Positions 11,001 through 14,000 of a stretch of DNA of 64,000 bases are shown here, one piece after another. The DNA lies in contig NC_067399.1 in the NCBI RefSeq assembly GCF_016432865.1, positions 636,430,001-636,494,000 on the forward strand. The letters are read 5' to 3'. The notes below the pieces were generated by a model. It saw only the letters and a list, made by a program, of their open reading frames with translations. It did no database searches and was not told where the DNA came from. Each line of letters begins with the position of its first letter. Position 1 is the stretch's first letter. Made by a program: the position numbers and the translations under genes. The stretch is from Antechinus flavipes (lineage: Eukaryota).

Positions 11001-14000
11001 GGACAGAACAGCCCCCTCAGCAGGCATGCAGCCCCAGCCTTCTCTCGGCTCCTCAGCCAGTAAGTTGGAAGGAGGCGCGGCCCCCACCCCCTCCAGTCGC
11101 CGGCTCCCCACCCCCTTCGGTCGCCGGCTCCCCTTGCACTGACGCCGTCTCTGGCCGCGCCAGGACAGGAGCCGGGCCGGTGGTGCTGCCCGGCCTAGCC
11201 AGGTTCTGGAGCACAGCCTCTGCCCTGGGCGGGGGTTCTAGGTTGGGGGAAGATACGGAGGCTCCGAGAGAGGCAAGCAGGGAAAGGGCCCCTAGGGAAG
11301 GCCCGAAGCCCAGCTTAGGAGGAGGCAGAAGAGGGGCAGGCCAGGGGGGTGGGAGACAACCAGGGGCGTCCTCAGCATGCTGGAGGCCAGCCGCGGGGTT
11401 CCGTGTCCTCGGAGACGGCGCTCGCCCCCAGCTGCCAGTCGTACTTTGGTGCAGGGGCCCCCTCCTTTTCTCCTCTGGCTCACACCGGGCCGGCCCGCCA
11501 GATCCGCGGATGGCACGGGAGAGAGGCCCTGAGGGGGCGGGGAGGTGCACGTGTGTCTGCAAGGCGGCTGGCGCTCGTGGCTGCTGCCTGCCCACCTGTG
11601 GCTGCTGGCTGCGCGCCCCCCCCCGGCTGCGCCCTTCCCCGCCCCCCCTCCCCTCCCCCCGCCTGGCTCCGCTTCCGTTTTTGGTTTTTGGCTGCGCTGC
11701 CCCGCCCTCCCCACCGGGCTGCCGCGGGGCGCCTTTCTAATGCTTGCATTTGTCTTGCAGCCGCTGGCTCCTGTGAGGAAAGGCTTATGGCCTGGGACGG
11801 GCCAGGGCTGCCATCAGGGCTAGCACGTGCTCAGTCCGAGCCCTCCCTCCCTCTGGTGGCGCCTTTCGCTCTCAGTGGCGCTCGGTGTAAGTGAGCTGCC
11901 CGGGAGCGTGGGACGCCCCCTCCCGGCCTTCCGGGACCTCCCTGGGCCGCAGCCCCGCCCCCCCGAGCTCAGCCTTGAGCCCCGGGACGAGGCCTGATTG
12001 GATAGCTGGGAGGGGCGGGGGCCGGGGAGCAGGTCGGGGCTCTGGGTTTGTCTGGTGTGGGGCTGCCAGCGGCCCTGGCTTGTGTCTGCAGCTAACACGG
12101 GCAGGTCCTCTCCCTTGTCCCTCCGGAGAGAGCCGGGGCTGCCGGTCCTTCTCCATGTTCCTCACGTGTCTCCCGTTCCTGCCTGCTCCTTTTGGAACCC
12201 TTCCCGAGGGGGCTTGGCTCCCCTGGCCTAAGCGCGCTATTCTAGGGGCGACTGAGTACTGAGGGGCGGCTTTACCTGGCAGGGGGAGGTTATTAGTGGC
12301 GCTGTCCCAGCTGGACGATGGACTCTTCTCCCCACGGGTCCCTGGGGGCTTCAGTGGTTTGGCTCTGGCTGTAGGAGCAGGGCAAAAGCCAGAGCCCCAC
12401 ACCCAGTCAGCTGTCGGGGTGGGATGGGGGCTCCCTGGGGGCGGGGCTGGGAAGGGTCCTTTTCTCCTCCCATGGTTAGGCTAAGGAGCGATGGCAGAGG
12501 TCTGCTCTTTGGGGAGCCCTAAAGGGGGAGGGGATAGAAGGTAACTCTGGAGCCAGAGGCGCTGTGAAGGAAGGGGGGAGGGGGCTTTCTTGGGTTCTTC
12601 CCCACCCATGCAGGTGAATTTCAGGGCTTTTTTCCTACAGTTCGAAAACAAGAGATCATTAAGATCACGGAGCAGCTGATTGAAGCCATCAACAATGGGG
12701 ATTTTGATGCCTACACGTAAGTACATGCTCTGAGTGCAGCTCTCTTCCCAGAAGGAGCTGCCCCTCCGACCTAGTGTGTGGGTCCTAGGAAGTAACTGGG
12801 GTCTCAGAGGGCCAGGGCGCTGAGTCTCAGCCATTCCCTTTGCCCAGGGGAACAAATCTGGAGGTCTTTGAGCTTCCTGATGCCTGGGAGGGGAAGCCAA
12901 GGATTGATATAAAAGCCAGATAACCAGGGCCTTCTCAGTGTTTAAGTCACTATGAACACGTGGCTGGCTTGTGGCTGCAGAGGAGAGGGCTGAGAGAGGC
13001 CCTGGAAAACCTTGCCTTGACTGGCTTCTCCCTGCAGGAAGATCTGCGATCCGGGTCTTACCTCCTTCGAGCCTGAGGCACTCGGCAACCTGGTGGAGGG
13101 GATGGACTTCCATAAATTTTACTTTGAGAATCGTGAGTGGGTTCGTGCTGCTGAGATCCTCCCACCTGCCTCCCATCACTTCCTCCTTCCCGTATCCTGC
13201 ACTGGCCTTCTCTTCCCTTGTGTGCCCACTGCTTCCCCCAGCCTCCTGCTTCTGTCTCGCCATCCTTTCCCAAAGACCTCTGTCTTCCCGTGCCAGGGCC
13301 CGGGCATAGCTAAGCGGTGCACCCTGCTTGATCTCGCCAACTAAGTAAATGGGTCACAGAGGCTGTTAGCAGCTTAAAATCAGGGTGGGGCAGTGTACAC
13401 GGCTAAAGGGGTTAAGCTACAGCTGTGTTTGTGACGTGGAGAAATTTGGCTGGGTAAAAATTCCAAATGTTGAGGTAAAAAGCAGTGAAGAAGTTGGATT
13501 TCAAGCTCTCAAATACTTCTCCAGTGGATCTGTGATCGGTTCTCGCCAGTTATCTTCCCACACACTTTTAGGCCTGCTTCTTTGATGTGACATTTGACCC
13601 CACACAAATGCCCCACAACCTATCCATCTCCAGAGACATTCCCCTAGAGGAGCTCTTCTCAAACTTTTTGGTCTCAGGGCTCTTGCTTCCCAGCCTCACA
13701 AAATGCTTTTCTTTATGGAGGTTATATCTATTAATAATTGCCATATTAGAGATTAAAAACTATGAAATTAGTTTTGACCTCACAGACCTTCCCAAAAAGC
13801 CTCAGGGACCCCAAATCAGCCTAAGAAGACTGTGGCTCTGAAGTGGTGGTTCTTTATATCCTTTGTGCCACGGACCCCTCTGGTGGTCAGTCTGGTGAGG
13901 TTTATGGACCCCCATTTCTAAGAATAATATTCTTTAAAGTAAAATGCACAGGATGACAAACCAAATATATTGTAAAACAATATGGACCTTTTCCCCCTTT

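What the first reader, a model, noticed from the sequence alone, without database searches (positions are those of the whole stretch)
11761..11886. Candidate unannotated in-frame CAMK2G linker exon carrying a CaMKII-autophosphorylation / 14-3-3 motif
Seen: every hallmark of a real exon. There is a ~195-nt AG-free zone (11564-11758), a branch-point-like CTAAT about 20 nt before ttgtcttgcAG, and a T|GTAAGT donor. The 126-nt length and phase 1-1 fit exactly between the 9918-9966 or 10943-11059 exon and the 12641 hub exon. Peptide: (A/T)[41 protein letters not shown](F)RKQEII. Established: L-A-R-A-Q-S fits the CaMKII consensus Hyd-X-R-X-X-S, and R-A-Q-S-E-P fits the 14-3-3 RxxpSxP pattern; linker length tunes CaMKII activation; CAMK2B betaM has extra exons at this same position. 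Inference: a new regulatory linker module, possibly an autophosphorylation-gated 14-3-3 docking site. I do not recognise it from described gamma isoforms but cannot check databases.
Basis: partly seen in the sequence, partly recalled or inferred. Interest (0 to 1): 0.82.

Follow-up and report, generated by a model that had tools for sequence, protein, structure and literature searches.

The report
Ancient conserved CAMK2G linker exon
The 126-base stretch is a real coding exon of the CaMKII-gamma kinase gene, kept with the same length, frame and splice sites in a mammal, birds and a frog; it is already in public gene models of birds and a frog, and its conserved phosphorylation and docking motif has not been tested.

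Summary
Window 11761-11886 has an AG acceptor, a GTAAGT donor, a 195-nt AG-free zone, a length of 126 nt, phase 1-1 and the stated peptide.

These features alone are not significant: about 0.3 equally good pseudo-exons are expected by chance in this GC-rich intron. Comparison with other species settles it.
- The orthologous exon in many birds and in the frog Ascaphus truei is exactly 126 nt and aligns without gaps.
- Its splice sites are in the same places, and only this reading frame is open in every species.
- Differences fall mostly on third codon positions (8/13/24), with a rough dN/dS of about 0.2.
- Between window and bird or frog loci, only the known exons and this block can be aligned.

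Public gene models already splice the exon: bird RefSeq XP partials (exon 18 to it), a Mimus model (exon 19, the exon, then the hub) and Ascaphus models (the exon, then the hub). It is therefore not unannotated across vertebrates.

The invariant residues include L-x-R-x-x-S-E-P-x-L, which resembles the HDAC5 Ser259 site. Any function in phosphorylation or 14-3-3 binding is inference.

The parts
11761..11886 (+). Alternative cassette exon of CAMK2G. It is 126 nt, phase 1-1, lies between linker exon 19 and hub exon 22, and encodes 42 residues.
   Evidence: Open only in this frame. Aligns without gaps to the 126-nt orthologous exons of birds (L001-L005, L007, L008) and frog (L006). Differences by codon position are 8/13/24 and rough dN/dS is about 0.18-0.21. 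The exon is spliced in models P0002, P0014 and P0018.
11735..11760 (+). Conserved 3' splice region: branch-point-like TAAT, a pyrimidine tract and the acceptor AG.
   Evidence: 22 of the last 30 intron bases are identical to bird. TAATGCTTrCrTTTGTyTTGCAG is shared with birds, and TAAT..CTT..TTT..CAG is shared with frog.
11564..11758 (+). AG-free zone upstream of the acceptor (195 nt).
   Evidence: The same zone is 118-148 nt in birds and 51 nt in frog.
11887..11907 (+). Donor GTAAGT and the conserved start of the downstream intron.
   Evidence: GTAAGTnAGCnGC..GG.AGC is shared with birds. The blastn block against Mimus runs to 11907. About 40 nt of downstream intron are conserved between bird and frog.
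11820..11849 (+). Codons for [10 protein letters not shown], the candidate phosphoserine and 14-3-3-type motif. The Ser codon is at 11835-11837.
   Evidence: Read. Bird has LERARSEPLL and frog has LERTQSEPVL. The invariant positions are -5 L, -3 R, S, +1 E, +2 P and +4 L.
11769..11807 (+). Codons for [13 protein letters not shown], a second conserved block. The pattern across species is SCE[ED][KR]L[LM]AWDxPG.
   Evidence: Invariant columns S, C, E, L, A, W, P, G in alignment A4.
9918..9966 (+). Upstream linker exon 18 ([16 protein letters not shown]), a possible splice partner.
   Evidence: It is joined directly to the orthologous exon in bird models P0002-P0005.
10943..11059 (+). Upstream linker exon 19 (117 nt), a possible splice partner.
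   Evidence: It matches human exon 19 as printed in 10.1101/721589. It precedes the exon in Mimus model P0014.
12641..12716 (+). First hub exon ('exon 22', [25 protein letters not shown]), the downstream splice partner.
   Evidence: The orthologous junction is seen in P0014 (..NRAP|LRKQEII) and in P0017/P0018 (..NGSL|FRKQEII).

Best explanation
Window 11761-11886 is a genuine alternative cassette exon of CAMK2G that dates back at least to the tetrapod ancestor. It sits between linker exon 19 and the first hub exon.

When included, after exon 18 or exon 19, it inserts 42 residues immediately before the hub domain's N-terminal helix.

Shown here:
- the exon's anatomy;
- orthology in birds and a frog with identical length, phase and splice sites;
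- protein-level purifying selection in the predicted frame;
- its presence, spliced to the flanking exons, in public gene models of other species.

Inferred:
- The insert lengthens the flexible linker.
- It carries two selected short motifs, SCE[ED][KR]L[LM]AWDxPG and L-x-R-x-x-S-E-P-x-L.
- The second motif is most likely a serine phosphorylated by a basophilic kinase that prefers a hydrophobic residue at -5 and Arg at -3. Candidates are CaMKII itself within the holoenzyme, PKD, or AMPK/SIK-type kinases.
- Once phosphorylated, the site would dock 14-3-3, as the near-identical HDAC5 Ser259 / HDAC4 Ser246 sites do. This would change the localisation or compactness of holoenzymes that contain this subunit.
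- Inclusion is probably tissue-restricted. Published human hippocampus, mouse brain and mouse heart surveys list no exon at this position.
For: Sequence anatomy.

First homologues. A phmmer search of the 41-aa peptide against 1.84 billion proteins returned only two clusters.
- One is P0002, with relatives P0003-P0005. These are NCBI Gnomon 'CaMKII subunit gamma-like, partial' models of Cariama, Nestor, Merops and other birds, in which exon 18 is joined directly to ATQSCEEKLLAWDSPGQTLELERARSEPLLTPVVPFVLNRAP.
- The other is a set of Logan ORFs that read through the same bird exon in genomic DNA.

Exon anatomy in other species. The bird, frog and metagenome-borne bird loci all show a 126-nt exon with ..YAG| and |GTAAGT. 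The alignment to the window has no gaps.

Substitution pattern.
- Window versus bird: 64% nucleotide identity and 22/41 residues identical.
- Differences by codon position are 8/13/24 (chi-square p = 0.011). Rough dN/dS is 0.18.
- The other two frames carry stops in every species.

Alignable blocks. Between window 9800-15500 and the bird and frog loci, the only alignable blocks are exons 18, 19 (bird only), this exon, 22, 23 and 24.

Spliced models.
- P0014 (Mimus melanotis) reads exon 17-18-19-this exon-22-23.
- P0017 and P0018 (Ascaphus truei, Pfam PF08332) read this exon joined to FRKQEII and the hub, to the C-terminus in P0018.

Motif. 17 of 41 columns are invariant, including every motif-defining position of L-x-R-x-x-S-E-P-x-L. 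The four positions the motif does not define (-4, -2, -1, +3) all vary.

Precedents.
- HDAC5tide PLRKTASEPNLK (Ser259) is used as an AMPK/SIK substrate (PMC3631101).
- CaMKII-dependent 14-3-3 docking on HDAC4 Ser246/467/632, and a 14-3-3 switch at a CaMKII-delta linker serine, are described in review PMC12642011.
Against: - A word search for 105-334-aa products containing the window peptide found nothing.
- The four runs that hold the exon (X1-X4) are of unknown kind and small, about 100 M letters each. They may be DNA capture libraries.
- All spliced evidence from other species is gene models. I could not establish how these were built. No Logan RNA-derived spliced ORF turned up in the length ranges I could search.
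- The window copy is much more diverged (20-22/41 residues identical to bird or frog) than bird versus frog (32/41). Constraint may be relaxed in this lineage.
- Published exon catalogues list no exon between 19 and 22: human hippocampus (10.1101/721589), mouse brain (PMC9853378) and mouse heart (PMC8222303).
- The +1 residue is Glu, not the hydrophobic residue CaMKII prefers.
- The motif is short. Phosphorylation and 14-3-3 binding are untested.
Confidence: 0.8

Rival explanations
1. It is a vestigial exon. It is real and in use in sauropsids and amphibians, but is no longer, or only negligibly, spliced in this mammal. The copy is intact only because it has not yet been disabled, or because it overlaps another constraint.
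For: The window copy has diverged two- to three-fold more at the protein level than bird versus frog. Its GC content has risen to 67% against 53% in bird and frog. Mammalian surveys of CAMK2G splicing report no such exon. No mammalian product was found.
Against: After roughly 300 million years, neutral DNA would not align at all, and nothing else in these introns does. Here there is no indel in 126 nt. AG, GTAAGT, the TAAT branch region and the open frame are all intact. Differences are concentrated at third codon positions. The exon is at least as conserved between window and bird (64% nt, no gap) as exon 19, an accepted mammalian exon (70% nt with a 3-nt indel, not alignable to frog).
Confidence: 0.13
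2. It is a conserved non-coding element, such as an intronic enhancer, a splicing regulator or a structured RNA, that happens to be open and flanked by AG and GT.
For: Synonymous sites are unusually conserved between bird and frog (dS about 0.37-0.63, 84% nt identity). The flanking intron is conserved. RNAalifold predicts hairpins inside the exon, with a few pairs changed on both sides.
Against: Three-base periodicity of the differences, a single frame open in all species, exact conservation of both splice junctions and of the 3n length. Independent gene models splice it in frame to CAMK2G exons. The fold is not significantly more stable than shuffles (z = -1.7). Conserved flanks and constrained synonymous sites are also typical of regulated alternative exons (general knowledge), so they do not argue against coding.
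Confidence: 0.04
3. It is a chance pseudo-exon in a GC-rich intron.
For: About 0.3 equally good open 3n pseudo-exons are expected in this intron. Long stop-free frames abound here.
Against: Orthologous 126-nt exons exist in birds and a frog with identical boundaries. The degenerate motif pattern has 0 chance matches in 100 shuffles of the window. In the metagenome collection it found only one bird-derived copy plus one unrelated hit.
Confidence: 0.02

Closest known systems
CAMK2G linker exon 19 and the other CaMKII variable-linker cassette exons (exons 13-21 in the numbering used in 10.1101/721589)
   Same: Same gene region, between the regulatory segment and the hub. Symmetric phase 1-1, 3n length, and a cassette-type exon that codes for a linker and not for a folded domain.
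   Different: It is not in the published human or mouse exon lists, where gamma goes from exon 19 straight to 22. It has no detectable sequence similarity to gamma exon 19 or to CAMK2B exon 20. It aligns to frog, which exon 19 does not at E < 1e-3.
Predicted bird and frog CAMK2G products that contain the orthologous exon: RefSeq XP_009700152.1, XP_010188607.1, XP_010281769.1, XP_010142626.1, XP_010015410.1 and XP_008938121.1; GenBank Nmel_010528 (Mimus melanotis) and FKM82_015230 (Ascaphus truei)
   Same: Orthologous exon: 126 nt, same splice sites and frame, 49-57% identical residues to the window peptide, and the same invariant motifs.
   Different: They are gene models of other classes of vertebrates. 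They are named only 'gamma-like, partial' or 'hypothetical protein', and no function is attached. The window copy is the most diverged.
Class IIa HDAC 14-3-3 sites (HDAC5 Ser259 PLRKTASEPNLK; HDAC4 Ser246)
   Same: The pattern L(-5)-x-basic-x-x-S-E-P-x-L(+4) is shared. The HDAC5 peptide is a substrate of AMPK/SIK-type kinases (PMC3631101). CaMKII-driven 14-3-3 docking on HDAC4 is described in PMC12642011.
   Different: The resemblance is a ten-residue motif only, with no homology. HDAC5 has its basic residues at -4 and -3 (R-K), while here there is Arg at -3 only. Nothing has been tested for the CAMK2G peptide.
CaMKII-gamma G-2 variant of ferret aortic smooth muscle (Gangopadhyay 2003; Marganski 2005; Gangopadhyay 2008, as summarised in PMC4819215 and PMC3566533)
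   Same: [quoted passage not shown] An insert directly in front of the hub that carries a phosphoserine next to P-S-L-P would fit that description.
   Different: Identity could not be tested. The primary papers and the G-2 sequence are not held. The PxxP is present in the window (PSLP) but not in birds or frog (PLLTP, PVLTP). This is a lead, not a match.

Membership tests
CaMKII variable-linker cassette exon | Lies between the regulatory-segment exons and the first hub exon of a CaMKII gene. | tested here: met
   Lies between exon 19 (10943-11059) and the hub exon (12641-12716) of CAMK2G. The order is the same in the Mimus and Ascaphus loci.
CaMKII variable-linker cassette exon | Frame-preserving: 3n length, with the same phase at both ends as the neighbouring exons. 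| tested here: met
   126 nt, phase 1-1. It joins exon 18 or 19 to the hub in frame. The length is 126 nt in every species.
CaMKII variable-linker cassette exon | Canonical splice signals conserved in orthologues. | tested here: met
   AG and GTAAGT sit at identical alignment columns in mammal, birds and frog, and the TAAT branch region is conserved.
CaMKII variable-linker cassette exon | Purifying selection on the encoded peptide. | tested here: met
   Codon-position differences 8/13/24 (p = 0.011), rough dN/dS 0.18-0.36 in all pairs, and a single open frame.
CaMKII variable-linker cassette exon | Observed in spliced mRNA. | tested here: inconclusive
   It is spliced in the gene models P0002-P0005, P0014, P0017 and P0018, but the evidence behind those models is unknown.
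14-3-3 mode-1 binding site (R-x-x-pS-x-P) | Arg at -3, Ser at 0 and Pro at +2. | tested here: met
   RAQSEP in the window, RARSEP in birds and RTQSEP in frog. R, S and P are invariant.
14-3-3 mode-1 binding site (R-x-x-pS-x-P) | The serine is phosphorylated and binds 14-3-3 in a phospho-dependent way. | not testable with these tools
   Needs phosphoproteomics or a binding assay.
CaMKII substrate consensus (hydrophobic-x-R-x-x-S/T-hydrophobic) | Hydrophobic residue at -5 and Arg at -3. | tested here: met
   L at -5 and R at -3 are invariant.
CaMKII substrate consensus (hydrophobic-x-R-x-x-S/T-hydrophobic) | Hydrophobic residue at +1 (a preferred feature, recalled from general knowledge). | tested here: not met
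   +1 is Glu in all species. The L(-5)/R(-3)/L(+4) pattern fits PKD or AMPK/SIK-type kinases at least as well (HDAC5tide).
Paralogue of the CAMK2B exon 19-21 / CAMK2G exon 19 proline-rich exons | Detectable sequence similarity to those exons. | tested here: not met
   Local alignment scores are no better than shuffles. Peptide versus gamma exon 19, p = 0.52. Peptide versus beta exon 20, p = 0.82. DNA, p = 0.47. The test has low power: gamma exon 19 versus beta exon 20 is not significant either.
[quoted passage not shown] | Sequence identity with the ferret G-2-specific segment. | not testable with these tools
   The primary papers and the sequence are not held. Only the review description is available.

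The most novel reading that the evidence does not exclude
CAMK2G carries a tetrapod-wide, more than 300-million-year-old cassette exon that the CaMKII literature has overlooked. Its selected core (L-x-R-x-x-S-E-P-x-L, as at HDAC5 Ser259) would be an autophosphorylation-gated or PKD/SIK-gated 14-3-3 docking site placed right at the hub. Dimeric 14-3-3 could then clamp or relocate whole holoenzymes in the tissues where the exon is included.
Probability: 0.25. Interest if true: 0.65.

Novelty: new member of a known kind. Interest (0 to 1): 0.45.

Why it matters
CaMKII linker exons set the kinase's calcium sensitivity and its targeting. The exon catalogue used by the field for gamma goes from exon 19 straight to the hub. 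An additional exon that has kept its length, its splice sites and a class-IIa-HDAC-like phospho/14-3-3 motif since the frog-amniote ancestor suggests a specific, testable regulatory input to gamma-containing holoenzymes. It may also explain variant-specific targeting reported in smooth muscle.

It is not a discovery of a new kind of element, and annotation pipelines have already picked it up in birds and a frog. The value lies in flagging it for functional work and for annotation in mammals.

Tried and rejected
- **Chance estimate.** A crude PWM enumeration showed that the exon hallmarks alone are not significant, so I did not rely on them.
- **Paralogy.** Tests against gamma exon 19 and CAMK2B exon 20 gave no signal.
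- **Protein search, window frame.** The search for homologous proteins with the window's 191-codon stop-free frame, scoring residues 149-189 and candidates of 105-334 aa, found nothing. This says nothing about full-length isoforms, which lie outside the length range.
- **Protein search, P0002.** Searching residues 60-107 returned only bird genomic read-through ORFs.
- **Metagenome scan.** A scan with a degenerate motif pattern, aimed at eutherian host contamination, returned one bird copy and one unrelated hit.
- **Ferret G-2.** I could not retrieve the ferret G-2 sequence from the literature.
- **Splicing-factor motifs.** No GCATG (Rbfox), CTCTCT or ACTAAY motif lies within 300 nt on either side in the window. 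None of these motifs recurs at a matching position in the window, Mimus and frog.
- **Structure prediction.** AlphaFold2 of the frog exon plus hub with a 7-row alignment gave mean pLDDT 40.7, which is unusable, so no structural claim is made.
- **RNA folding.** Folding the exon with its flanks gave z = -1.7 and a few compensated pairs. With effectively three lineages this is too weak to claim a structure.
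Full report
**1. What is in the window**

The + strand carries the 3' half of CAMK2G.
- Linker exons encode [11 protein letters not shown] (~5.2 kb) and [12 protein letters not shown].. (~7.7 kb).
- Exon 18 is at 9918-9966 ([16 protein letters not shown]) and exon 19 at 10943-11059.
- The first hub exon is at 12641-12716 ([25 protein letters not shown]), followed by further hub exons at ~13.03 kb and 14.97-15.2 kb.
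- NDST2 follows on the + strand from ~19.6 kb, and ZSWIM8-like ORFs lie on the - strand.

The peptides are nearly identical to the human exons printed in 10.1101/721589, so the species is a mammal. Earlier notes of this scan place other findings more than 600 Mb upstream on the same sequence. That points to a marsupial-type giant chromosome. This is an inference and was not tested.

**2. Checking the observation**

- acceptor ttgtcttgcAG|CC;
- donor GGT|GTAAGT;
- CTAAT about 21 nt upstream of the exon;
- no AG between 11564 and 11758 (195 nt);
- 126 nt, with only the phase-1 frame open;
- the peptide [41 protein letters not shown];
- in-frame joins to exon 18, exon 19 and the hub exon.

On their own these are weak evidence. 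A crude PWM enumeration finds 11 (+ strand) and 17 (- strand) equally good, open, 3n, phase 1-1 pseudo-exons per 64 kb, or about 0.3 expected in this intron. The local GC content of 65% produces stop-free frames of 190-265 codons through the same intron.

**3. Cross-species evidence**

*First homologues.* A phmmer search of the 41-residue peptide against 1.84 billion representative proteins gave exactly two hits.
- P0002 is an NCBI Gnomon partial model named 'CaMKII subunit gamma-like'. It and its close relatives come from Cariama, Nestor, Merops and other birds.
- It reads exon 15-16-17-18 and then, directly, ATQSCEEKLLAWDSPGQTLELERARSEPLLTPVVPFVLNRAP.
- P0001 and its relatives are Logan or ENA ORFs that read through the same exon in bird genomic contigs.

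*Exon anatomy in other species.*
- In the bird loci the exon is exactly 126 nt, with ..tttgttttgcag| and |gtaagt.
- It aligns to the window without a gap.
- 22 of the last 30 intron bases upstream are identical.

*Models that splice the exon to the hub.* A second word search added three models.
- P0014 (Mimus melanotis) is spliced exon 17-18-19-this exon-22-23.
- P0017 and P0018 (the frog Ascaphus truei, Pfam CaMKII_AD) splice the exon to FRKQEIIK and the hub, to the C-terminus in P0018.
- Their loci again show a 126-nt exon with the same boundaries.

*Substitution pattern.*

| Pair | Nucleotide identity | Identical residues | Differences by codon position | Rough dN/dS |
|---|---|---|---|---|
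| Window vs bird | 64% | 22/41 | 8/13/24 (chi-square p = 0.011) | 0.18 |
| Window vs frog | 61% | 20/41 | 13/12/24 | 0.21 |
| Bird vs frog | 84% | 32/41 | 7/4/9 | 0.36 (dS only 0.37) |

The other two frames contain stops in every species.

*Alignable blocks.* blastn of window 9800-15500 against the bird and frog loci aligns only the known exons (18, 19, 22, 23, 24) and this block. Exon 19 does not align to frog at E < 1e-3, whereas this exon does.

Chance and a purely non-coding element are therefore excluded for practical purposes. This is a real coding exon that is at least as old as tetrapods.

**4. What could not be shown**

I have no evidence of inclusion in this species' mRNAs.
- The look-up of sequencing runs returned four runs of one study. 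Their kind is unknown, each is about 100 M letters, and all hold the exon words. They could be RNA or capture DNA.

The spliced evidence from other species consists of gene models whose supporting data I cannot see.
- P0014 starts at the first Met of a partial transcript-like ORF, and P0014 and P0017 end in retained intron. This looks like transcript-based annotation, but that is my inference.
- Searches limited to 59-334-residue candidates found no RNA-derived spliced ORFs.
- Full-length isoforms lie outside the reachable length range.

**5. Mechanism**

Shown: the insert is 42 residues, placed immediately before the hub's first helix.

Alignment A4 has 17 invariant columns of 41. They fall in two blocks:
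- SCE[ED][KR]L[LM]AWDxPG;
- LxRxxSEPxL, followed by xPxVxxFxL.

In the ten-residue stretch [10 protein letters not shown] (window), LERARSEPLL (bird) and LERTQSEPVL (frog), the invariant positions are -5 L, -3 R, Ser, +1 E, +2 P and +4 L. The four variable positions (-4, -2, -1, +3) are the ones no kinase or 14-3-3 consensus specifies.

The pattern matches three known motifs:
- 14-3-3 mode 1 (RxxpSxP);
- the hydrophobic(-5)/Arg(-3) requirement of CaMKII, PKD and AMPK-related kinases;
- nearly residue for residue, HDAC5tide PLRKTASEPNLK around Ser259 (PMC3631101).

CaMKII-driven 14-3-3 docking on class IIa HDACs, and a 14-3-3 switch at a CaMKII-delta linker serine, are described in PMC12642011.

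Inferred: the exon supplies a phospho-gated 14-3-3 docking site and extra linker length. Glu at +1 argues that CaMKII is not the optimal kinase. I put about 0.35-0.4 on this functional reading, against about 0.9 on the exon being genuine.

Constrained synonymous sites and conserved flanks suggest regulated, probably tissue-specific, splicing. No Rbfox motif is nearby.

**6. Comparison with what is known**

It is a further member of the CaMKII variable-linker cassette exons.
- It is absent from the exon lists for human hippocampus (10.1101/721589), mouse brain (PMC9853378) and mouse heart (PMC8222303).
- It shows no detectable similarity to gamma exon 19 or to the CAMK2B proline-rich exons.
- It is already present in RefSeq and GenBank models of birds and a frog, so it is not unannotated among vertebrates.

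[quoted passage not shown] It might be the same insert. I could not obtain its sequence, so this remains a lead. I rate it at roughly one in three.

**7. Verdict**

- Novelty: a new member of a known kind.
- Interest is moderate.

The scan has not reported this exon on other DNA.

Noticed in passing
window 20675-21272: A minisatellite with an 18-bp unit (CCTCCCGGCCCGCTCTCC), about 34 copies and 79% matches, lies just downstream of the NDST2 first coding exon. It produces long spurious stop-free frames on both strands (PALPSR.. and GRAGRE.. repeats).
   Followed up: partly
L001 19759-19913; L002 19524-19630; L003 12962-13118; L004 10508-10777; L005 955-987; L008 10037-10231: Six independent bird contigs or scaffolds all end within about 30-270 nt downstream of the orthologous exon, where a C-rich tract begins. 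This looks like a recurrent assembly break, and it explains why the bird RefSeq models are partial and stop at this exon.
   Followed up: no
L001 19633-19758 vs L006 10167-10292 (orthologues of window 11761-11886): Bird and frog exons are 84% identical at the nucleotide level, with dS only about 0.37, and about 40 nt of downstream intron are conserved. RNAalifold predicts two hairpins inside the exon (GCCUGGG/CCCAGGC and UUGGAGUUAG/CUAACUCCAG), with two pairs compensated in the window. This suggests an RNA-level constraint such as splicing control. Editing was not examined. The evidence is not significant (z = -1.7).
   Followed up: partly
window 10943-11059; L001 17865-17998: Exon 19 is conserved in birds (114 nt against 117 nt, 70% identity, splice sites kept), yet the bird RefSeq partial models skip it. 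It is not alignable to the frog locus at E < 1e-3, so it is less deeply alignable than the exon under study.
   Followed up: partly
L006 10001-10166: The Ascaphus GenBank models (FKM82_015230, P0017 and P0018) start at an ATG inside the intron upstream of the exon and read through the acceptor. The frog CAMK2G gene therefore appears to be split into two models.
   Followed up: no
window 11078-11133: A 24-bp unit is repeated 2.4 times (90% matches) immediately after the exon 19 donor, within a very C-rich intron.
   Followed up: no
   Followed up: no
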